Shown in pieces: positions 3,202-63,464 of a stretch of 64,000 nt of DNA (within the stretch, counting starts at the first letter, position 1; every line of letters begins with the position of its first letter). Position numbers and translations under genes: made by a program. The stretch lies in the IMG/VR virus record IMGVR_UViG_3300003322_000571, positions 286,090 through 350,089 of that record; one strand, written 5' to 3'. The notes below the pieces were generated by a model. It did not search any database and was not told where the DNA came from. It was given only the letters and a program-made list of their open reading frames with translations.

Positions 3202-4320
3202 TTACTTCACTCGGTTAAGGATGTAGCTCGCAATCTCGTGTGGATGAACTTTGCCACGAATAGGAGGAACTTTCTTTGGGGTGTGTTGAACGGGTGCTGA
3301 CCTAACACGTGGTTGAGGCATCGGCACTTCTTCATCTTCTTGATCAACTGACAGACTACGCTTTTCAGTAACTTCAAAGTCGTCATCATTGTCGTGACCC
3401 ATTTCGCTACGGAACTTGGACAACTGAGCAAGACGCTTGACTTCGCGTTCTTCTTCTTTCTTAGCCTTGTTGTACTGCTCCATGTCAAGCAGTTGTTCTT
3501 CCTGCTTTACTTTCAGGGAAGCACGGCGGGCGATCGAATCTGCTTCCTTCGTCTTAGCTTCAGCTTCACGAGCGCGGGCATCAGCTGTACGCGCTTCAGC
3601 GTCAGCCATCATCATGTCGATTACTTTGTTGAGCAGAGACTTCGCGTCTTCATCGTCACCTGTATCGGCTGGGAGTTCCGCATCAACATCGTCCATTCCT
3701 TCCATGTCGCCTTCAGGCGGAACTTCACCGTCTGCACCTTGCAAGTCGACGTTTTCTTCTTCGTCTTCTTGAACTTCAGGCCATTGAACGTCGACGATGT
3801 CGAAACGGTCCTTCAGCTTGAACAACACTTCAGCAATTTCAGGTGGTGCTTCATCTTCTTCGACGTCAGCCAAAAATGCTTGGAGTGCTTTTTCGAAGTC
3901 TTCAGCTTGTTCGTGCTTAACGACAACACGAACAAGACCACGTTCGTCATCTTCCAAACCGAACGTGACTGTATCACGATGATCTTGCTCTTCGCGGCTT
4001 TCTAGGCCTTTCAGCTTTGCAATAACACCTGCTGTGTCAAAAGTCTTGTTACCGCCGTACGTATTACCTTGGCCTTCTCCGTCTTGCGAGAATTCGACCA
4101 GTTTAGCATACTGTTCTTTGAGCGACTTCTTTTTTGTAGCCTTGGAAGTCTCTTCTTCGTCACCGACGAACGTTTCTTCCTTGTCGGCTTGAGGCTTTGT
4201 ACGCTTTACCAGAACGGAGAAAAGCGGCATGGCCATTCCTCCAGCCATACCGCCTGCGCCTACAGCTCCGCCAGCTGCGTCTTCTTTGACAAGCGCGTTG
4301 ATCTTTTTGATTAGTTCCAT
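3202..4320 (-). CDS. hypothetical acidic coiled-coil protein
   Basis: long ORF; start moved to MELIKK downstream of CATAAATA motif. Confidence 0.75.
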   Translation of the reverse strand: MELIKKINALVKEDAAGGAVGAGGMAGGMAMPLFSVLVKRTKPQADKEETFVGDEEETSKATKKKSLKEQYAKLVEFSQDGEGQGNTYGGNKTFDTAGVIAKLKGLESREEQDHRDTVTFGLEDDERGLVRVVVKHEQAEDFEKALQAFLADVEEDEAPPEIAEVLFKLKDRFDIVDVQWPEVQEDEEENVDLQGADGEVPPEGDMEGMDDVDAELPADTGDDEDAKSLLNKVIDMMMADAEARTADARAREAEAKTKEADSIARRASLKVKQEEQLLDMEQYNKAKKEEEREVKRLAQLSKFRSEMGHDNDDDFEVTEKRSLSVDQEDEEVPMPQPRVRSAPVQHTPKKVPPIRGKVHPHEIASYILNRVK

Positions 4321-6412: not shown

Positions 6413-7408
6413 TTAACCAACAACTAGAATCTGTGGATACGTTGTCTTTACTGCGGACGGGCTTACAAACCCCTTCCCGCCTGTGATATACGTCTGTGGA
6501 GACGTCTTATCAACGTAGTACGCATCGACATACCTGTCGTAGATGCGGTCGACTGAGGCGAAAGGAGATGTTCCTAGAACATAAAGCACTCGTCCTGGCG
6601 TTAATGGTTGAGTACTAATTGCACTCAAGTAGAACCCAGCTCCGTTGGGAATAATTCCCTGTGAGAAATACGGAGGTGCTAACGGAGACGTCAGTAGGTT
6701 GAAACTACGCAGTGTGTACATCTTGCCATTGATGATCGCTTTCTGAGCGTTGACCCACGGAGAGTCTACCGATACAACGTTGTCAATATTGATGTAATCG
6801 ACAATCACGTCGCCTTGTGGCGACAAATAGGTGATTGTGATGCCAACGGTTGTAGAGGAATCCAATGTTGCAATTGTTACTTCACCATTATCGCTAGACA
6901 ATTGCAGAACATCGGCTGGAACGGCAGCAGGATTAATGCTGTCAGCATTCGTTGTATTCTGAGAAGCAAGTGAAATACACTGAGCTGTACCTGAATATGC
7001 TGTACGGAACGTCAGCAGTGTCGTATTCAGGTCGATAGTTTCGATCGACAACGGTTCCTCCGTTACAAGAACAGATTCTCCGTCAATCACTTTGTATACG
7101 TATGCGTGAATTACTGGCTTGTTTGCCAGGTCGTGCTTGATCAGCCATTGGCTGTCAGCAATTGTTTGGTTGTATGTGAAGAGAACTCGTCGCTGAATCC
7201 AATCTTCAATACCAGCAATCTCCGGCGGATTTGCTGGCGTGTTATTGATGTCACGAATCAATGTGACGCGACGAAGCTTCCCGAGGCAACCAAGGGTGAT
7301 GTTGCAGTTTGGTAGAACATCGAGCCCCTGTTTATTCTCAGGCACGCGATTTCGACGGTTGCACGTATCACATTCGTATACGTGTTCACCCCTGGTTGTC
7401 GTAGCCAT
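6413..7408 (-). CDS. hypothetical beta-rich protein, possibly virion structural
   Basis: 331 aa Thr/Ser-rich ORF with N-terminal CxxC. Confidence 0.7.
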   Translation of the reverse strand: MATTTRGEHVYECDTCNRRNRVPENKQGLDVLPNCNITLGCLGKLRRVTLIRDINNTPANPPEIAGIEDWIQRRVLFTYNQTIADSQWLIKHDLANKPVIHAYVYKVIDGESVLVTEEPLSIETIDLNTTLLTFRTAYSGTAQCISLASQNTTNADSINPAAVPADVLQLSSDNGEVTIATLDSSTTVGITITYLSPQGDVIVDYINIDNVVSVDSPWVNAQKAIINGKMYTLRSFNLLTSPLAPPYFSQGIIPNGAGFYLSAISTQPLTPGRVLYVLGTSPFASVDRIYDRYVDAYYVDKTSPQTYITGGKGFVSPSAVKTTYPQILVVG

Positions 7409-14005: not shown

Positions 14006-15885
14006 TCTTTACGAGCGTCAGAGTCGTTGCCGAATAGCAGTTCCATAACTTGTTTTGTGTCCTCGTCTGCGACAATCGGGATCATTGTGTCAGTTTCACC
14101 GGACAAGCACATATCCCAATCTTCCTTGCTCATAGAGCCCAGACCCTTGTAATATCGTACTTCATAACCCTTGTACTTGTCTTTGACTTTTTCGTAATCG
14201 GCACGGCGTGGGAAATGGACGCGTGTTTTCCCTTTAACCAAGCAGACGTTAGGAGCAATCATTCGGAACAAGAACGGTGGCTGTTTTGGATCGAGCAGTT
14301 CAGGCCAGAACTTGTAGAATAGGTTTGTCAACAATGTGAAGATGTCGGAGCCGTCGTAGTCAGCGTCGGTTGCGATGATCACTTGACCGAAGTTGAGTTC
14401 ACTACGAACAGCTTTCTTACCAGGGATCAGTCCAATCGCTTGCAACATGTCCTTGACTTTGACCATCTTCAGTACTTGCGCAGGAGTAGCGTCGTACACG
14501 TTGTTGATCTTACCAGTCAATGCAAACGCAGCCGTTGTTTTTGGATCGCGAGACATCGAGATCTGTCCTGCAGCAGAATTACCTTCTGTGATCAGAACGC
14601 GACATTCTGCACGGTTCGTGCTCGTTGCATCGAGCAGACCGTCAACCTTCTTACCGATTTTTTTCGCGTGTTCCTTTTGTGCATCAGCATCTGCTTGAGC
14701 GTGGTGGCGGTTGTTGGCACGGAACAGAATATCTTCAAGCCACAACTCCGAACGCTTAGCGAACATCTTCCACTGAGCGTCGATCATTCCCGTCATTTCC
14801 TTGCGGAGATCGGGACCTGTCAGGCGGGTTTTAGCTTGACTATCGTATTCTGGATTACGGACTTTAAGGTTTGCAAGAACAAGCAATCCACGACGAATGT
14901 CGTTGTTTGTAATCTCGGACTTAGTCTTCTTAGCAGCTTTTTCCAGGTGATTTTGTACACGGCTATACAGTGCGTTGAGGAACTGCGTGTTGCATTTACC
15001 GCCGTCAAACAACAACGAACTGTTGACCCAAGTGAACATCTGTTCGTCGATACCGTCATGTGCATTAAGGACAACAAACACTTCGCCAACGAGTGTTGGC
15101 TCGTTGACTTCAAAGCAGTAGAACTGTTTATCGCCAGCGATCTGAGCGACGAGGTCAAGCAGTCCCTTCTTGAACCTGTACTTTTCACCGTTATATTCAA
15201 CAGTGACATCCGGGTTTGTCATCGCAATTTCGATAGCGCGATTGCGGACAAGTTCGTCAGGAAGGGTTACATTCTTGAATACGAGCGGATCGAGCTGGAA
15301 TGATACCTGTGTCCCGGAAGGTGTATTGTCAGGAACAGAAGTGATTTTTGGTGATGAGGCCTTATCAGCACCGTCAACGAATCGCTGAACGTACTTTTTG
15401 CCGTCGCGGTGAATGACAACGTCAAATTCACTCGAGCAATAGTTAGTACATGCTGCGCCAACACCGTTTTGACCGATGACGCCGACTTCCTTATCATCAG
15501 TGAAGTTGCGTCCGGCTTTCAAGCTACCGAGAGCGACTTCTGGTGTGCGCTTCCCTGTAGCGTGCATATCAATCGGAATGCCGCGGCCGTTATCGCCAAC
15601 AGAATACCAGCCAATGTCTGGCTTAGCGTCAAACTTGAGTAGTTTGATTCGAGATGTTGTTTGGGAGAATTCGTCGAGCGCGTTATCAACGACTTCGTTG
15701 ATAGCTTTGAATACAGACGGGATGAATTCGACTTCGCGAATTTCTAGTTTATCCGCCGTAAGCAGTGGAATTCGATAGGTGGTGGGGTTCATGTTCCCCA
15801 GGTAGATCTGAGTTCGTAGACGAACGTGATCCCTATCCGACAATGCAACGATGTCATTGCCGGTGTAGTTCTTGTCCTTAGCCAT
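13987..15885 (-). CDS. DNA topoisomerase II, GyrB/ParE-like subunit (gp39+gp60 unsplit)
   Basis: EVVDNALDE, DNGRGIP, GQNGVG, TEGNSA, ATDADYDG, YYKGLGS. Confidence 0.95.
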   Translation of the reverse strand: MAKDKNYTGNDIVALSDRDHVRLRTQIYLGNMNPTTYRIPLLTADKLEIREVEFIPSVFKAINEVVDNALDEFSQTTSRIKLLKFDAKPDIGWYSVGDNGRGIPIDMHATGKRTPEVALGSLKAGRNFTDDKEVGVIGQNGVGAACTNYCSSEFDVVIHRDGKKYVQRFVDGADKASSPKITSVPDNTPSGTQVSFQLDPLVFKNVTLPDELVRNRAIEIAMTNPDVTVEYNGEKYRFKKGLLDLVAQIAGDKQFYCFEVNEPTLVGEVFVVLNAHDGIDEQMFTWVNSSLLFDGGKCNTQFLNALYSRVQNHLEKAAKKTKSEITNNDIRRGLLVLANLKVRNPEYDSQAKTRLTGPDLRKEMTGMIDAQWKMFAKRSELWLEDILFRANNRHHAQADADAQKEHAKKIGKKVDGLLDATSTNRAECRVLITEGNSAAGQISMSRDPKTTAAFALTGKINNVYDATPAQVLKMVKVKDMLQAIGLIPGKKAVRSELNFGQVIIATDADYDGSDIFTLLTNLFYKFWPELLDPKQPPFLFRMIAPNVCLVKGKTRVHFPRRADYEKVKDKYKGYEVRYYKGLGSMSKEDWDMCLSGETDTMIPIVADEDTKQVMELLFGNDSDARKEWLTAK

Positions 15886-18366: not shown

Positions 18367-18449
18367 TGGTTCTCCTTTGCTCTGTACGAAACTATTTACG
18401 CTGGAGAAATAGCAGTGATCTTTACCCGTATACCCAGGGACCGGAAATG

Positions 18450-18473
18450 AAGGAAGGCGCCGAAGCGCCTTCC
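18450..18473 (-). terminator. GC-rich hairpin ending tmRNA transcript
   Basis: AGGAAGGCGC-TTCG-GCGCCTTCCT. Confidence 0.7.
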
Positions 18474-18795
18474 TATGATACTGTTGTTATCGGGGTATCA
18501 TGCCCTCAGTCAAGCATTAAGCTGCGAGACGGAAGTTACCTTCATTTGCATTTAGGTTGTTTTCTTGAGTTACGGTCTTCGCCACCGGCATGCGCCATCC
18601 ATCTCAGTAACTCTGTCGAAACCAGGGCAGGCCCATGACAGAAGATTCAACGCTACGTTACTTTTCGAGGGCCTAGGTTCCCTTTAACCGTTTCACGCAG
18701 CACTAAACCTTCTGTGGTGGACCTGGCGGGAATCGAACCCGCGTCCAAAATCCTTCAACATCAGTCGAATTACATGCTTCATCTGCTTGCGCAGA
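18450..18795 (-). ncRNA. ssrA: circularly permuted (two-piece) tmRNA; tag ANEGNFRLAA
   Basis: acceptor piece ...GACGCGGGTTCGATTCCCGCCAGGTCCACCA (ends 18715) precedes coding piece GGGCCTGCCCTGGTTTCGAC (starts 18634); 7-bp acceptor stem with G3-U; tag codons 18549-18517. Confidence 0.93.
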
Positions 18796-18827
18796 TACGT
18801 CTATTTAAGCATAGAACCCTAAAACTA

Positions 18828-43487: not shown

Positions 43488-44425
43488 ATCGATTCAAACA
43501 ACGAAGTTAATTCAGCGATGTTTGATCAAAGCCAAGCTGTGAAGGGACTGGTTCGATTCCAGGTGTGAGTAACAGAAGCTCTATCAAGGACGGAGCGTCA
43601 TTGTTTGGTACGTTCTTTACAATTCAAGATTTGGGGCATAGCCCGGATAACTCCAGTGATGGAGCCAAAGCCTTAATGCTACATTATGGCGCCAGAAATG
43701 GTCAATCTATGCAAGCTCAGTTCTCTCCAGAAATGGAGGCTTCGTCGGGTTATCTGGCGGAGATAACTAGGAAATGAGTGTTGTGGAAAGAACACGAGGT
43801 CAAGTGCCACGCAAGTGGGAACACAACTGAGTGGAAAGCTGGGTGGTACCGGCTTCACAACAAACCAAACTCATCAGTAGGTAAGAACAAGAGTAGTGTC
43901 AATGTCCAAGCCGGCAAGCGAGGGCTATGATGCAGTTTGAGAGGTTAGTGGTGTGTGAAACATCATTGGTCTTGAAAAACAGTTGAGTAAGCGGCAGCTG
44001 AAAGACATGGAGGTGTGTTGTATTTTGGTGGTCAAAAGCCATCGAAGCAACTGGACGCACACATCTTCGTAGCGATTTCCGGTTAAAAACCGGGTAATTC
44101 ACGGTTTATGAATATCTTTAACGCAAAAGTTGCGTCCGGTGTTGTGTGAAAGTGGCTTAATTCTGTGGCAGCAATGTAACACAGACGTCTGAAGCTCGCA
44201 AGGCAGAGGATGTTGAAAGTGAGTCGCACGTTTGGCTAGGCATAGTCGAGCGGTAGACAAACTTCGAATAGCACAACGCGACGAGGTAACCGCCAACCTC
44301 TAAATAAGGCAGTCATGCAAGGTACTCTCATGAGAGAGTGGATAAGTGTAGAACCAATGGTGTAGCAGCCAAAGGATAATGACACAAAAGTCTTGTACCA
44401 ACCGATGTAATCTCAGTCGTTTGAC
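43488..44425 (+). ncRNA. large (~940 nt) ornate noncoding RNA (GOLLD/ROOL-like class candidate)
   Basis: no credible ORF between promoter and terminator; many short hairpins (GCAA, GAAA and ATGA loops) and a T-arm at 43548-43563. Confidence 0.7.
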
Positions 44426-46778: not shown

Positions 46779-46855
46779 GCTCTCTTAGCTCAATTGGTTA
46801 GAGCGGCGGTCTCTAAAACCGACGGCTACGGGTTCGAATCCCGTAGAGGGCACCA
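46779..46855 (+). tRNA. amber suppressor tRNA (anticodon CTA)
   Basis: full cloverleaf, loop CT-CTA-AA, encoded ACCA. Confidence 0.88.
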
Positions 46856-55766: not shown

Positions 55767-55841
55767 GGTCAAGTTGAAAAACAAAACCTTAATTGTTCTT
55801 TTTACAATTTGGATAAAACCGATGAATCTAGTGTTCATCGG

Positions 55842-55917
55842 GGTGACGTTAGTGTAGTGGTTCGCATTACTGTCTGTGAAACAGTAGGAACGGGTTCAAT
55901 CCCCGTACGTCACCCCA
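55842..55917 (+). tRNA. tRNA-His(GTG) with encoded G-1, C73, CCA
   Basis: cloverleaf; loop CTGTGAA. Confidence 0.92.
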
Positions 55918-55934
55918 ATGAACATTAGAATTAT

Positions 55935-56026
55935 GGAGGCATGGATGAGTGGTTTATATCGCTTCCCTGCTAAGGAAGAGCTCGGCGAAAGTCGGGCCGT
56001 GGGTTCGAATCCCACTGCCTCCTCCA
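55935..56026 (+). tRNA. tRNA-Ser(GCT)
   Basis: long variable arm, CCA. Confidence 0.92.
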
Positions 56027-56039
56027 ATGTGTGTAGTGT

Positions 56040-56111
56040 CAGGGTAGAAGGCGTTTGGTAGCCACTTAGCTTTGGAAGCTTTGAGTCTCAGTTCGATTCT
56101 GAGTATCCTGA
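56040..56111 (+). tRNA. tRNA-Pro(TGG)
   Basis: C1-G72, A73; weak anticodon stem; no CCA. Confidence 0.7.
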
Positions 56112-56129
56112 CAGTGCACATATTACAAT

Positions 56130-56365: not shown

Positions 56366-56436
56366 ACTCACCGCCGTCGGAACGGTTCTGTGTCTACGAA
56401 ACACGGATTTGGAGGTTCGAATCCTCTCGGTGGGTC
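56366..56436 (+). tRNA. tRNA-Arg(ACG), atypical D arm
   Basis: loop CTACGAA, T arm; D arm GCCGT-CGGA-ACGGT. Confidence 0.6.
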
Positions 56437-56440
56437 AAAT

Positions 56441-56514
56441 GTCTCCATAGCTCAGCGGATTAGAGTAACACGCTACGAACGTGTTGGTCGGGGGTTCGAA
56501 TCCCTCTGGAGGCT
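56441..56514 (+). tRNA. tRNA-Arg(ACG)
   Basis: canonical cloverleaf. Confidence 0.92.
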
Positions 56515-56573
56515 CAAAAGAGTTGATATGTAAAAGGTTACAAAGTAAAGTTTACATATCAGTTTCCAAATCT

Positions 56574-56646
56574 GGTGCACTCGGCTCTCTGGGAGACCAC
56601 TTCACTGTCTATGAAGGCTAGACGGGTTCGATTCCCGTGTGCATCG
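56574..56646 (+). tRNA. tRNA-Asp(GTC)
   Basis: loop CTGTCTA, T arm. Confidence 0.75.
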
Positions 56647-56652
56647 CAAATG

Positions 56653-56829
56653 TGTGTTTAAGACTGTCGCACGCCAAAAGGCACAGTGGGTTAAGTCTTA
56701 CTTCATGTCTTTACTTGTTGGCGCAAGTATAACATGTTGTCCATTAGTACAGTGGTAGTACGTCGCCTATAACGGCGAAGACGCGGGTTCGATTCCCGTA
56801 TGGAATTTTTGACGACAGCCTTAAACACA
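56653..56829 (+). ncRNA. end-clamped RNA containing a tRNA-like domain (56740-56804)
   Basis: 17-bp terminal helix (1 mismatch); D, anticodon-like (6-nt loop) and T arms inside. Confidence 0.6.
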
Positions 56830-56830
56830 T

Positions 56831-56875
56831 GGTTCGTTAGCATAGTCTGGCTTAATGCGCTTGCCTGTCACGCAG
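56831..56875 (+). pseudogene. 5' fragment of tRNA-Asp(GTC) truncated by HNH cassette
   Basis: acceptor 5' strand, D arm, CTGTCAC loop; no T arm or 3' strand. Confidence 0.7.
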
Positions 56876-56913
56876 TTCGAAGGTGACAGTCATAAATATC
56901 GTCAGAGGTGTTT

Positions 56914-57330
56914 ATGGAAACAAAAGTGTGTTCGGCTTGTAAGGTTAACAAATCGTTGAGTGAGTACAACAAGTACAAGCGATCAAAGGATGGGTTAGAT
57001 TATCGTTGCAAATTGTGTCAGCGCAATTCAAACAAGAGTTGGGTTGAAAACAATTGGGAGCGTAAGCTAGCACAGCAAACTGATCGACGTTCTCAACTAC
57101 TGACACAGTTGAGAGAGTTCAAAAGAACTGCTGGTTGTAGATGCTGTCCTGAAACCGAGCCGGTGTGCTTGGAACTGCATCACCTTGATCCGAATGAGAA
57201 GGAAATTGATCCTTCAAGTATGGTAAGTCAAGGTTGGAGCTGGGAACGCATGAAGAGTGAAATTGATAAGTGTGTAGTCTTGTGTAGTAACTGTCACAAG
57301 AAAGTACATGCGGGATTGTTGGAAATTTAA
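56914..57330 (+). mobile_element. free-standing HNH homing endonuclease in tRNA array
   Basis: CSAC..CKLC, CRCC..LELHHLDP..KCVVLCSNCHKKVH; CATAAATA at 56891, AGAGG RBS. Confidence 0.85.
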
Positions 57331-57332
57331 TT

Positions 57333-57407
57333 GGTCTCAAGGTGTTCATGGACGCATACGGCACTGTCACTGCTGAGGAGGGGGATCGTTACCCCCTGGG
57401 ACCGCCA
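57333..57407 (+). tRNA. tRNA-Asp(GTC)
   Basis: cloverleaf, variant T loop ATCGTTA, CCA. Confidence 0.85.
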
Positions 57408-57916: not shown

Positions 57917-57926
57917 CTAAGATGTT

Positions 57927-58117
57927 ATATGTCGGCTCTTGAGACATCGCAACTCGTGAGAGATGCTATTAGCGTCGACATTAATTCCGGGACAACACGA
58001 TGGCGCGCTCAGTCATAACGTAAAACCGGAGCCTATCTGAGCAATAGGTAAAGTCTTCGATTGTACGGCAGGCTTCTATAATAGTGGCCAGGAACTCGAA
58101 GCCAAGAGCCGACATAT
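57927..58117 (+). ncRNA. unassigned ~190-nt RNA closed by a perfect 15-bp helix
   Basis: ATATGTCGGCTCTTG/CAAGAGCCGACATAT. Confidence 0.65.
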
Positions 58118-58124
58118 GACATCG

Positions 58125-58196
58125 GGGGAGGTCGTTTAGCGTTCAAGACACTGGCCACTAAAGCCAGCGACGATGGTTCGAATCCATCCCTCCCCA
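58125..58196 (+). tRNA. tRNA with CTA anticodon and non-canonical A33
   Basis: CTGGC-CACTAAA-GCCAG; full cloverleaf; no CCA. Confidence 0.65.
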
Positions 58197-58202
58197 CAAA
58201 TT

Positions 58203-58285
58203 GGATCGCGAGTGGCATTGGTGACTACAGCTGACTGTAAATCAGCCGCCTTCGGGCATACTAGGTTCGATTCCTAGGCGATCCA
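58203..58285 (+). tRNA. tRNA-Tyr(GTA)
   Basis: loop CTGTAAA, variable arm GCC-TTCG-GGC. Confidence 0.9.
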
Positions 58286-58419
58286 CAAAGTGATGGTCGG
58301 CGAGGTACGCTGTTCAGTCGATCATCGAAATTCCCTACAGGCGTACTGCAAAGGGATGCTTACCAAACTTGAGGCGGCGGAAGCACGACCTCGGAAACTA
58401 GAAGTAGTTTCCAACCTTT

Positions 58420-58503
58420 GTCCCGTGATGACTGCTGGTAACGGTCAGTAGCCTTTCAAGCTACCGCCTTTGTGCTGGGGTTCGATTCCCCCACGGGATA
58501 CCA
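58420..58503 (+). tRNA. tRNA-Glu(TTC) with enlarged variable region
   Basis: GTAGC-CTTTCAA-GCTAC, CCA. Confidence 0.75.
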
Positions 58504-60108: not shown

Positions 60109-60267
60109 ATGAAGATCAAAGAGCTAATTCGTGAGTTTGTCGAACAACGCAACGGTAAGTGGGTAGTGCTTGATCACACCAAGAAAAAGGTGTTGGGAAC
60201 GCATGATACCAAAGACGAAGCGGACAGGCAGCTTGCAGCTATTGAGATCAATAAGCACAAACACTAA
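60109..60267 (+). CDS. small hypothetical protein (MKIKELIREF...)
   Basis: GGAGG RBS, TAAATA at 60084; 52 aa. Confidence 0.6.
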   Translation: MKIKELIREFVEQRNGKWVVLDHTKKKVLGTHDTKDEADRQLAAIEINKHKH

Positions 60268-60347
60268 CCCTTCGTGGCAAATGTAAATTGGTACAGCTAC
60301 TACGTTCAGACCGTAGGCTTTTGTCGGTTCGAATCCGACCGAAGGGA
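60268..60347 (+). tRNA. tRNA-Leu(CAG)
   Basis: CTACG-TTCAGAC-CGTAG. Confidence 0.88.
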
Positions 60348-60352
60348 CAAAG

Positions 60353-62120: not shown

Positions 62121-62201
62121 GCCCGAGTGGTGTAATGGTAGCCACAGGAGACTCAAAATCTCCCGCCTCACAGCGTGTCGGTTCGAATCCGACCTCGGGT
62201 A
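62121..62201 (+). tRNA. tRNA-Leu(CAA)
   Basis: GGAGA-CTCAAAA-TCTCC. Confidence 0.9.
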
Positions 62202-62355
62202 CAAAGTAACGGTTCAGTGTTAGCGCATTGGACATACCAGTCTGGCCAGACGGATGATATGTACGGCCGTACGTTGAGTCTTATTTGTGAATTGGTTCTT
62301 GCGTTCGAATCGCAGGTCACAATAGGTAACGTTACTAACATATTAGGAAAAGTAG

Positions 62356-63384: not shown

Positions 63385-63464
63385 GTCCTCTTGGCTAGGG
63401 TAAATTGGTACAGCCACTACGCTCAAACCGTAGGCTCTTGCGGGTTCGAATCCCGCAGAGGACA
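63385..63464 (+). tRNA. tRNA-Leu(CAA)
   Basis: CTACG-CTCAAAC-CGTAG. Confidence 0.88.

What the first reader, a model, noticed from the sequence alone, without database searches (positions are those of the whole stretch)
56653..56829. tRNA mimic enclosed by a 17-bp end-to-end helix (Y RNA-like architecture)
Seen: TGTGTTTAAGACTGTCG/CGACAGCCTTAAACACA clamps an AU-rich region plus a tRNA-like domain. That domain has D arm GTAC/GTAC, a 6-nt-loop arm TCGCC-TATAAC-GGCGA, a canonical T arm, only 5 acceptor bp and no CCA. Known: bacterial and phage Y/Yrl RNAs combine an end-pairing Ro-binding stem with a tRNA-like module. Inference: a Yrl-like RNA or a decoy for anticodon nucleases.
Basis: partly seen in the sequence, partly recalled or inferred. 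Interest (0 to 1): 0.65.

Follow-up and report, generated by a model that had tools for sequence, protein, structure and literature searches.

The report
Clamped tRNA-like RNA in phage tRNA operon
A 350-kb soil/root phage carries, inside its tRNA gene array, a conserved ~180-base structured RNA whose ends pair into a long helix around a tRNA look-alike that cannot decode; it belongs to a family not in Rfam, resembles Y RNAs and T4 'species 1' RNA in build but is not a YrlA, and its job is unknown.

Summary
Window 56653-56829 has a 17-bp end-to-end helix (16 Watson-Crick pairs and one A.C, extendable by two G.U pairs). It encloses a 68-nt 5' domain and a tRNA-like domain with a 5-bp acceptor, a 6-nt 'anticodon' loop and no CCA.

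I found six homologues in other phage contigs, all inside dense tRNA arrays. On a structure-fitted alignment 93.9% of cells pair and 29 of 45 pairs change on both sides, in every helix. G.U far outnumbers A.C, so selection acts on the + strand RNA.

The 'anticodon' loop is 5-6 nt and not conserved in sequence, and pair 1:72 never forms. It is therefore neither a decoding tRNA nor a pseudogene.

The Yrl reading is only partly supported. The phage does encode a Ro60 (TROVE+vWA) protein. But the Rfam YrlA model does not match. The one GNCGAA-G match is not conserved. Domain order is canonical, not permuted. The gene lies about 71 kb from TROVE. None of 46 other TROVE-bearing phage records has the element.

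Best reading: a stable, non-decoding tRNA-mimic RNA released from the tRNA operon transcript, its ends sealed by the helix, with an unknown partner. It is analogous to T4 rnaC.

The parts
56651..56669 (+). 5' strand of the terminal helix (P1). The outer part covaries; the inner core UUUAAGACUGU is nearly invariant in the family.
   Evidence: 19 pairs, 10 with changes on both sides, 96.9% of cells paired
56672..56677 (+). Invariant CGCCAA, complementary to the invariant UUGGCG at 56718-56723. Possible pseudoknot or long-range helix (inferred).
   Evidence: invariant in 7 of 7
56678..56711 (+). Variable part of the 5' domain. Local hairpins are predicted but not conserved in register.
56712..56729 (+). 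Hairpin P3: stem 56712-56718 with 56723-56729, loop UGGC 56719-56722. GUUGGCGC (56717-56724) is invariant.
   Evidence: helix 3: 4 of 6 pairs change on both sides, 90.5% paired
56740..56804 (+). tRNA-like domain:
- acceptor 56740-56744 with 56800-56804 (5 bp);
- D arm 56747-56761;
- 'anticodon' arm 56763-56778 with the 6-nt loop 56768-56773;
- variable loop 56779-56782;
- T arm 56783-56799.
   Evidence: acceptor 5 of 5, D 4 of 4, AC 3 of 5 and T 3 of 5 pairs change on both sides
56805..56812 (+). Single-stranded linker between the acceptor 3' strand and the clamp. No CCA.
56813..56831 (+). 3' strand of the terminal helix (P1). An independent soil-metagenome contig diverges from the window directly after 56829.

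Best explanation
SHOWN.
- The element is one member of a conserved family of about 180-190-nt structured RNAs encoded on the tRNA strand inside the tRNA arrays of related large phages.
- It folds into a 17-20-bp helix made by its two ends, a 5' domain and a tRNA-like domain.
- The 5' domain carries two invariant, mutually complementary motifs (CGCCAA and GUUGGCGC) and a covarying hairpin.
- The tRNA-like domain keeps the D and T arms, so presumably the tRNA elbow. It has a shortened, non-conserved 'anticodon' loop (mostly 6 nt), a 4-6-bp acceptor that never pairs at 1:72, and no CCA.
- It therefore cannot be a normal decoding tRNA, and it is not a decaying pseudogene.

INFERRED.
- It is co-transcribed with the neighbouring tRNAs.
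- Its ends are made by the enzymes that mature those neighbours. RNase P cuts at the 5' end of the next tRNA, and 3' maturation of the previous tRNA makes the other end. In several relatives the helix is flush with the adjacent tRNAs.
- The long terminal helix then seals both ends against exonucleases, giving a stable small RNA.
- This RNA presents a tRNA-shaped module to proteins that recognise tRNA shape rather than the anticodon. It would act as a tether or decoy. That is the logic of Y RNAs and probably of T4 species 1 RNA.
- The nearly invariant inner helix and the CGCCAA/GUUGGCGC motifs are the likely specific contact sites.
- The partner is unknown.
For: - Six homologues score 124-164 bits with the covariance model (the window's own copy 166.4). 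The next best matches, ordinary tRNAs, reach at most 33 bits.
- Covariation in all helices: 93.9% of cells paired, against 74.9% after shuffling and 37-46% with slid partners. 29 of 45 pairs change on both sides.
- In the clamp there are 16 G.U cells against 4 unpaired cells, one of them A.C, so selection is on the + strand RNA.
- 'Anticodon' loop by copy: TATAAC, TTGTG, CTTGCA, ATTCAA, GTTGTA (with a 4-bp stem), CGATGT, CTAACG. Pair 1:72 is mismatched in all seven copies.
- Every copy lies in a dense tRNA array.
- Flush borders: in L036 the upstream tRNA ends at 6701, the element spans 6703-6884 and the next tRNA starts at 6882. In L042 the element ends where tRNA-Thr starts.
- Cassette-like borders: it is precisely absent in L024, and another sample's contig diverges directly after 56829.
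- T4 rnaC sits in the T4 tRNA cluster and has a T arm plus 5'/3' pairing. Its role is unknown (PMC3014915).
Against: - No RNA data exist. No RNA run holds the sequence, so transcript ends and stability are not shown.
- No partner is identified.
- The pair counts come from an alignment fitted to the structure, with only seven sequences.
- Ordinary-looking tRNAs of the same phages (His, Pro, Asn, Gly) also carry covarying leader-trailer helices. The clamp may therefore be a general processing or folding device rather than a mature terminal stem.
Confidence: 0.55

Rival explanations
1. It is the Y RNA of the phage's own Ro60. The end-to-end helix would bind the TROVE ring and the tRNA-like module would tether an effector. 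This would be a new, non-permuted Y RNA class.
For: - The phage encodes a TROVE+vWA protein whose nearest solved relative is a phage Ro60.
- That gene sits in a module with a peptidyl-tRNA hydrolase and an RNA ligase.
- No canonical YrlA was found next to it, so its RNA partner is open.
- The inner clamp is conserved in sequence, as expected for a protein site.
- D. radiodurans Yrn1 was also modelled with a 5-bp arm and a 6-nt loop and is made with tRNA-Asp (PMC4201824).
Against: - There is no YrlA model hit.
- There is no conserved GNCGAA or CGAA motif and no bulge in the helix.
- The element lies about 71 kb from the TROVE gene.
- None of 46 other TROVE-bearing phage records carries the element, including complete 360-kb and 345-kb genomes.
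- The element-bearing record G003 holds the Gp23-like gene, which neighbours TROVE in this phage, but has no TROVE.
- Related arrays lack the element altogether.
Confidence: 0.12
2. It is a precursor, not a mature RNA. The clamp would be a double-strand processing stem, cut by an RNase III-type enzyme as in rRNA operons. It would be shared with the clamped tRNA-His, tRNA-Pro, tRNA-Asn and tRNA-Gly. After cleavage the tRNA-like part would be trimmed, given CCA by the phage enzyme and used as an unusual tRNA, and/or the 5' domain would be released as a small RNA.
For: - Leader-trailer helices of 14-20 bp with covarying sequence flank tRNA-His and tRNA-Pro in this phage and its relatives.
- The phage encodes a CCA-adding enzyme, and none of the 55 tRNAs listed is followed by an encoded CCA.
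- Three homologues have a 6-bp acceptor with only 1:72 open.
Against: - In the element the clamp is not coaxial with the acceptor. It closes a multi-branch junction that also holds a conserved 5' domain.
- The loop is 5-6 nt and differs between copies, so no codon is served.
- The acceptor has only 4-5 bp in four of the seven copies.
- No Ribonucleas_3_3 (PF14622) RNase III domain is found in the phage. A host enzyme would be needed.
Confidence: 0.12
3. It is a decoy for host anticodon nucleases or other tRNA-targeting defences.
For: It has a tRNA shape with a loop that cannot be used in decoding. It sits in a phage tRNA array, and such arrays are linked to evasion of tRNA-cleaving defences (general knowledge, not tested here).
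Against: Anticodon nucleases read specific anticodon loops. Here the loop sequence and even its length differ in every homologue, while the stems are kept by compensatory change.
Confidence: 0.05
4. It is a DNA-level cassette. The arms would be terminal inverted repeats of a small mobile element, or a recombination module that shuffles array units.
For: - Presence and absence among relatives have exact borders at the arms.
- A different downstream context begins directly after 56829 in another sample.
- A possible TG duplication flanks the element.
- HNH and GIY-YIG homing endonucleases lie in the arrays.
Against: - There is one copy per genome.
- G.U but not A.C is tolerated in the arms, and the internal helices covary.
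- No transposase is associated.
- A 2-bp duplication is expected by chance about 1 time in 16.
- Cassette-like gain and loss also holds for ordinary tRNA genes in these arrays.
Confidence: 0.05
5. It is a decayed tRNA pseudogene next to a chance palindrome.
For: The arrays hold many low-scoring tRNA duplicates.
Against: Seven homologues down to about 65% mean column identity keep every helix through compensatory changes. A helix of this kind is expected about 0.2 times per genome by chance.
Confidence: 0.01

Closest known systems
YrlA / bacterial and phage Y RNA-like RNAs (Rfam RF02553; Chen et al. 2014, PMC4201824; phage phiLo Yrl1/2, PMC12135203)
   Same: - A stem made by the 5' and 3' ends, plus a tRNA-like module with D and T arms.
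- Can be made together with tRNAs.
- The genome encodes a Ro60 homologue.
- The tRNA-like part cannot be charged as it stands.
   Different: - No match to the YrlA covariance model.
- tRNA order is canonical (D, anticodon arm, T) with an open acceptor. YrlA has a permuted order with a closed acceptor.
- There is no conserved GNCGAA/CGAA motif and no bulged Ro-binding helix.
- It lies about 71 kb from the TROVE gene rather than within 4 kb.
- It does not co-occur with TROVE in 46 other phage records.
- It has an extra conserved 5' domain.
Bacteriophage T4 species 1 RNA (rnaC) and species 2 RNA (rnaD)
   Same: - Small RNAs encoded in a phage tRNA cluster, flush with tRNA genes and near homing endonuclease genes.
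- rnaC has a T arm and pairing between its 5' and 3' ends.
- Their function is unknown (PMC3014915).
   Different: - No sequence or model homology: R2 matches only the T arm of rnaC, at 12 bits.
- rnaC lacks a full cloverleaf and the 17-20-bp clamp.
- rnaC and rnaD are 139 and 119 nt, against about 180 nt here.
Canonical tRNA (RF00005)
   Same: D arm, T arm, a 5-bp anticodon-type stem and a 4-nt variable loop. It scores 44.8 bits with the tRNA model, better than several tRNAs called in this array.
   Different: - The 'anticodon' loop is 6 nt (5-6 in the family) with no conserved anticodon.
- The acceptor has 4-6 bp and 1:72 is never paired.
- There is no CCA and no free ends.
- It is embedded with a 68-nt domain inside a terminal helix.
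RNase III processing stems of rRNA operons and phage early transcripts
   Same: A long leader-trailer helix encloses a structured RNA within a polycistronic transcript. The same phages put such helices round tRNA-His and tRNA-Pro.
   Different: - Cleavage was not tested.
- The inner helix is conserved in sequence.
- The phage shows no Ribonucleas_3_3 (PF14622) RNase III domain.

Membership tests
YrlA / Y RNA-like (RF02553) | Match to the family covariance model | tested here: not met
   No YrlA hit at E<=10 on 56500-57000 or at E<=1 on 40000-64000. The gathering score is 69 bits.
YrlA / Y RNA-like (RF02553) | Conserved GNCGAA(N0-1)G Ro-binding motif near the 5' end, in the stem | tested here: not met
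   The only match, GGCGAAG at 56772-56778, lies in the anticodon-like arm and is absent from all six homologues.
YrlA / Y RNA-like (RF02553) | Permuted tRNA-like module (T arm, closed acceptor stem-loop, D arm) | tested here: not met
   The order is acceptor-D-AC-T-acceptor, as in tRNA. The criterion is from PMC4201824.
YrlA / Y RNA-like (RF02553) | Encoded within about 4 kb of the Ro60 gene on the same strand | tested here: not met
   TROVE lies at genome 63535-65250 and the element at 342742-342918 of 350089. That is about 71 kb across the record ends, on the same strand.
YrlA / Y RNA-like (RF02553) | A Ro60 (TROVE) protein is encoded by the same genome | tested here: met
   TROVE 75 bits plus VWA_2. 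Nearest solved structure is 9KOP, a phage Ro60.
YrlA / Y RNA-like (RF02553) | Co-occurrence with Ro60 across genomes | tested here: not met
   None of 46 other TROVE-bearing IMG/VR records has the element at E<=1e-8; ten of them are at least 90% complete. Element-bearing records G003 and G004 have no TROVE, but they are fragments.
YrlA / Y RNA-like (RF02553) | Binds Ro60 | not testable with these tools
   Needs a gel shift or pull-down.
tRNA (RF00005) | Match to the tRNA model above the gathering score | tested here: met
   44.8 bits against a gathering score of 29, over model positions 3-68 only.
tRNA (RF00005) | A 7-nt anticodon loop with an anticodon kept among orthologues | tested here: not met
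   The loops are 5-6 nt and differ in sequence in all seven copies.
tRNA (RF00005) | A 7-bp acceptor stem with free ends and a CCA (encoded or added) | tested here: not met
   The acceptor has 4-6 bp, 1:72 is mismatched in 7 of 7, no CCA is encoded, and both strands continue into the junction. Processing and CCA addition cannot be tested here.
T4 rnaC-type stable RNA of phage tRNA clusters | Encoded in the tRNA cluster, with a T arm and 5'/3' pairing | tested here: met
T4 rnaC-type stable RNA of phage tRNA clusters | Sequence or structure homology to rnaC or rnaD | tested here: not met
   R2 matches only the T arm of rnaC, at 12.2 bits.
T4 rnaC-type stable RNA of phage tRNA clusters | Accumulates as a stable small RNA | not testable with these tools
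   No RNA run holds the sequence.
MITE-like DNA element | Terminal inverted repeats, target duplication and multiple copies | tested here: not met
   Inverted ends are present and a TG duplication is ambiguous. There is a single copy per genome, and the G.U asymmetry points to RNA.

The most novel reading that the evidence does not exclude
The element would be a new class of phage tRNA-mimic riboregulator with a specific partner. Two versions remain open.

(a) It is a non-permuted Y RNA for the jumbo-phage Ro60 / RNA-ligase repair module.

(b) It is a device built round an internal 'GCCA' mimic of a tRNA 3' end. The invariant CGCCAA would pair with an invariant UGGC-containing loop. That is the same pairing logic by which T-box leaders and RNase P RNA read tRNA 3' ends. 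The element could then sense or sequester tRNA 3' ends or the enzymes that act on them, namely the CCA-adding enzyme, RNase P and RNA ligase.

Together with the covarying leader-trailer clamps on tRNA-His and tRNA-Pro, this would point to an undescribed layer of tRNA-operon RNA biology in large phages.
Probability: 0.15. Interest if true: 0.8.

Novelty: new variant of a known kind. Interest (0 to 1): 0.6.

Why it matters
- Large phages carry tens of tRNA genes, and their arrays are usually annotated gene by gene with tRNA finders. Those finders label this element 'tRNA-???' or a pseudogene.
- The arrays in fact hold at least one conserved, non-decoding structured RNA family, and ordinary tRNAs with conserved clamp helices. 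This adds a class of phage non-coding RNAs that can be tested directly.
- It also offers a comparative handle on a question open for 50 years: what the small stable RNAs of the T4 tRNA cluster do.
- It shows that the presence of a Ro60 gene in a phage is not enough to call a nearby-looking tRNA mimic a Y RNA.

Tried and rejected
- blastn of 56500-57000 against 50,697 GenBank phages found no match.
- Three viral-contig pattern scans built from the window alone, or from two sequences, found nothing.
- The one metagenome pattern scan gave only a chance match in a GC-rich coding region, L030.
- Relaxed pattern hits L037, L038, L039, L041 and L043 lack the clamp and were set aside.
- The syntenic gap L002 9770-10001 has no clamp and no excess folding energy, z -0.27.
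- Weak YrlA hits in L002 (at most 29.5 bits) are far below the gathering score. Two of the three overlap called tRNAs (T arm of one tRNA followed by the D arm of the next). The third (15273-15388, E 0.0038) lies between two tRNAs and was not inspected.
- No YrlA hit lies near the TROVE genes of this phage or of Ralstonia phage RsoM2USA.
- Five cultured relatives (XacN1, Xoo-sp13, CM1, RsoM2USA, SCTP-2) lack the element.
- A weak full-length hit in G020 is a short clamp round an ordinary tRNA-Asn plus a T-arm fragment.
- The TROVE single-sequence locus search found nothing. The alignment-based search worked.
Co-occurrence on those 330-340-kb contigs is therefore untested.
- No RNA sequencing run holds the stretch. 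Read laying showed DNA contigs only.
- No Ribonucleas_3_3 (PF14622) RNase III domain is found in the phage.
- No other genetic code was used. The two tRNA(CUA) genes were noted, not applied.

Full report
**Setting.**
- The window is the last 64 kb of a 350,089-bp IMG/VR phage record with direct terminal repeats. The finding lies at genome 342742-342918.
- The DNA is held by a root metagenome run. A near-identical piece is in a soil metagenome of another study.
- The phage has about 57 tRNA genes in long same-strand arrays (window 55.8-64 kb, running on into genome 0-47 kb). It also has a tmRNA, a GOLLD RNA and two tRNA(CUA) genes.
- A Gp23-type capsid-like protein links it only distantly to jumbo phages such as XacN1, Xoo-sp13, RsoM2USA, PA5oct and SCTP-2.

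**Observation.**
- The arms 56653-56669 and 56813-56829 form 16 Watson-Crick pairs and one A.C. Two G.U pairs extend the helix outward.
- Inside lie a 68-nt 5' domain and a tRNA-like domain. The tRNA-like domain has a 5-bp acceptor, a GTAC/GTAC D arm, a 5-bp arm with the 6-nt loop TATAAC, a 4-nt variable loop and a canonical T arm. It has no CCA.
- Rfam's tRNA model matches positions 3-68 at 44.8 bits. ARAGORN calls it tRNA-???.
- The fold is 4.4 sd more stable than shuffles.
- Helices of this kind occur 9 times in the genome, against about 0.2 expected. Five of the nine lie in the tRNA arrays.

**Homologues.**
- GenBank phages and the first pattern scans gave nothing.
- I reached relatives through the conserved 406-aa gene upstream of the array.
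- One relative, L026, has the element at 70% identity. A profile of the two sequences found L033.
- Patterns from the invariant motifs then found L035, L036, L040 and L042 in IMG/VR.
- The covariance model scores the seven copies at 124-166 bits. Ordinary tRNAs reach at most 33 bits.
- All copies sit on the tRNA strand inside dense arrays, often flush with their neighbours. In L036 the upstream tRNA ends at 6701, the element spans 6703-6884 and the next tRNA starts at 6882. In L042 the element ends where tRNA-Thr begins.

**Structure is under selection.**
- The counts were made on the model-fitted alignment A7, which is fitted to the structure, so some caution applies.
- 93.9% of cells pair. 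The figure is 74.9% after shuffling (0 of 500 shuffles reach the observed value) and 37-46% with partners slid by 1-3 columns.
- 29 of 45 pairs change on both sides.
- Every helix is supported:
  - clamp: 10 of 19 pairs with double changes;
  - hairpin P3: 4 of 6;
  - acceptor: 5 of 5;
  - D: 4 of 4;
  - anticodon-type stem: 3 of 5;
  - T: 3 of 5.
- The clamp has 16 G.U cells against 4 unpaired cells, one of them the window's A.C. In L026 that position is G-C. The constraint therefore acts on + strand RNA, not on DNA inverted repeats.
- My independent parse of the tRNA-like domain gives loops of TATAAC, TTGTG, CTTGCA, ATTCAA, GTTGTA (with a 4-bp stem), CGATGT and CTAACG. Pair 1:72 is mismatched in 7 of 7. 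Acceptors have 4-6 bp and there is no CCA.
- So stems are kept while the loop is short and free to vary. The RNA is neither a decoding tRNA nor a pseudogene.
- Three features are invariant or nearly so: the inner clamp (UUAAGGCUGU with ACAGCCUUAA), CGCCAA, and GUUGGCGC. The last two are complementary and could form a pseudoknot with the loop of P3. This is inference, because invariant columns cannot covary.

**Cassette behaviour.**
- The element is precisely missing in L024. There, about 18 nt replace window 56639-56835.
- It is also missing from L022/L023 and from the syntenic array of L002.
- In soil run X2 a contig matches 56613-56829 with 3 differences, then diverges directly after the last base of the clamp.
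- Ordinary tRNA genes are gained and lost in the same way in these arrays.
- Because the selection is at RNA level, I read this as modular array evolution rather than transposition.

**The Y RNA question.**
- The phage does encode a Ro60-type protein: TROVE 75 bits plus vWA, 571 aa as read from the first GTG (558 aa on record), at genome 63535-65250. Its nearest solved relative is the Ro60 of Thermus phage phiLo.
- It lies in a conserved module with a peptidyl-tRNA hydrolase, a Gp23-like protein and an Rnl2-type RNA ligase.
- Each defining feature of YrlA that I could test fails:
  - There is no hit to RF02553.
  - The single GNCGAA-G match is misplaced and not conserved.
  - The domain order is canonical rather than permuted (criteria from PMC4201824).
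  - The distance to TROVE is about 71 kb.
- Of 46 further TROVE-bearing IMG/VR records found with a TROVE alignment, none has the element at E<=1e-8. Two of them are complete genomes of 360 and 345 kb.
- Conversely, G003 carries the element and the Gp23-like gene, which neighbours TROVE in this phage, but no TROVE in its 103 kb. It is a fragment.
- No canonical YrlA lies beside TROVE here or in RsoM2USA, so the partner RNA of these phage Ro60 proteins remains open.
- I therefore keep a 12% chance that this element serves Ro60 in this phage.

**Context: clamps are a theme.**
- tRNA-His, tRNA-Pro(UGG), tRNA-Asn and tRNA-Gly(UCC) of this phage have acceptor stems prolonged by 14-20 bp of leader-trailer pairing.
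- The His and Pro clamps recur in eight relatives with different but still complementary sequences.
- Two further clamped non-tRNA RNAs exist. One is element E (window 57921-58123), with homologues in L002 and L026. The other is element A (genome 545-685).
- The terminal helix may therefore be a general device of these operons, serving as a processing stem, a folding insulator or an end seal.
- In the finding it closes a multi-branch junction rather than stacking directly on the acceptor.
- The phage has a CCA-adding enzyme but no Ribonucleas_3_3 (PF14622) RNase III domain.

**Closest analogue by context.**
- This is T4 species 1 RNA (rnaC). It is encoded flush with tRNA-Arg in the T4 tRNA cluster, beside a homing endonuclease gene. 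It has a T arm and 5'/3' pairing.
- It shows no model homology.
- Its role is still unknown (PMC3014915, PMC9697503).
- An HNH endonuclease gene lies 79 nt downstream of the finding.

**Verdict.**
The architecture resembles a Y RNA, but family membership fails and the Ro60 link is not borne out across genomes.
- The decoy-for-anticodon-nucleases idea is disfavoured by the variable loop.
- The element is a member of a previously uncatalogued family of clamped, non-decoding tRNA-like RNAs of phage tRNA operons.
- That it is a conserved structured RNA is well supported (about 0.9).
- The proposed mode of action is inference (about 0.5). It supposes a stable tRNA mimic released by processing of its neighbours, sealed by its terminal helix, and binding tRNA-shape-reading proteins.
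- No RNA data could be found to test it.

Noticed in passing
window 55822-55934 (tRNA-His) and 56025-56125 (tRNA-Pro UGG); genome 32928-33043 (tRNA-Asn) and about 3704-3807 (tRNA-Gly UCC): Ordinary-looking tRNAs have acceptor stems prolonged by 14-20 bp of leader-trailer pairing. The His and Pro clamps recur in eight related contigs with different, still complementary sequences. This may be a processing or folding signal.
   Followed up: partly
window 57921-58123: Element E has a 23-bp terminal helix round about 160 nt, with no Rfam match. Homologues lie at L002 10729-10919 and L026 15162-15334 and have another clamp sequence. In the window it lies directly before a tRNA(CUA); in L002 an Rfam-only tRNA whose anticodon was not read follows it; L026 was not checked.
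   Followed up: partly
genome 545-685 (outside the window; L006 545-685): Element A has an 18-bp terminal helix round about 105 nt, in the array after tRNA-Pro(CGG). No homologue was found in the loci fetched.
   Followed up: partly
genome 63535-65250 (L009 4135-5850): A Ro60-type TROVE+vWA gene lies in a conserved module: PTH2, TROVE, Gp23-like, then an Rnl2-type RNA ligase. Hundreds of homologues at 45-73% identity exist, some on 320-340-kb contigs. No canonical YrlA lies beside it.
   Followed up: partly
L009 2893-2990 (genome 62293-62390): A 98-nt tRNA-like gene with a CUUAUAA loop (anticodon UAU) and a long variable arm lies 1.15 kb upstream of TROVE. It is followed by about 250 nt of non-coding sequence ending in a terminator-like hairpin. 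A similar 94-nt tRNA-Ile(UAU) follows the element in L036.
   Followed up: partly
window 44008-44419, 18448-18817, 46779-46855 and 58125-58197: A GOLLD RNA (207 bits), a tmRNA and two tRNA(CUA) amber-suppressor-type genes. Relatives also carry tRNA(CUA). No recoding was assumed.
   Followed up: no
window 56908-57330: An HNH endonuclease ORF (phrog_2255, E 5e-35) lies 79 nt downstream of the element. It is kept at 83% identity in L024, which lacks the element, and is absent in L026, which has it.
   Followed up: yes
window 56367-56436, 56574-56647, 57333-57407, 58203-58286 and 58420-58503: Several ARAGORN tRNAs score at or below Rfam's tRNA threshold, often as one of a same-anticodon pair (Arg ACG, Asp GUC, Glu UUC). 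The arrays hold many divergent duplicates.
   Followed up: no
window 60256-60351, 62176-62205 and 63402-63453: A 97-nt stretch not called as a tRNA by ARAGORN or Rfam is conserved at 84.5% with L002 13826-13920 and partly repeated in the window. Two of the three places hold T-arm-like or weak tRNA matches. Its nature is unknown.
   Followed up: no
L110 2909-3047 (phage T4 rnaC): T4 species 1 RNA folds with a T arm (CCGGG-UUCGAAU-CCCGG) and pairing of its 5' and 3' ends, z -4.6. It is a partial tRNA mimic in a tRNA cluster.
   Followed up: partly
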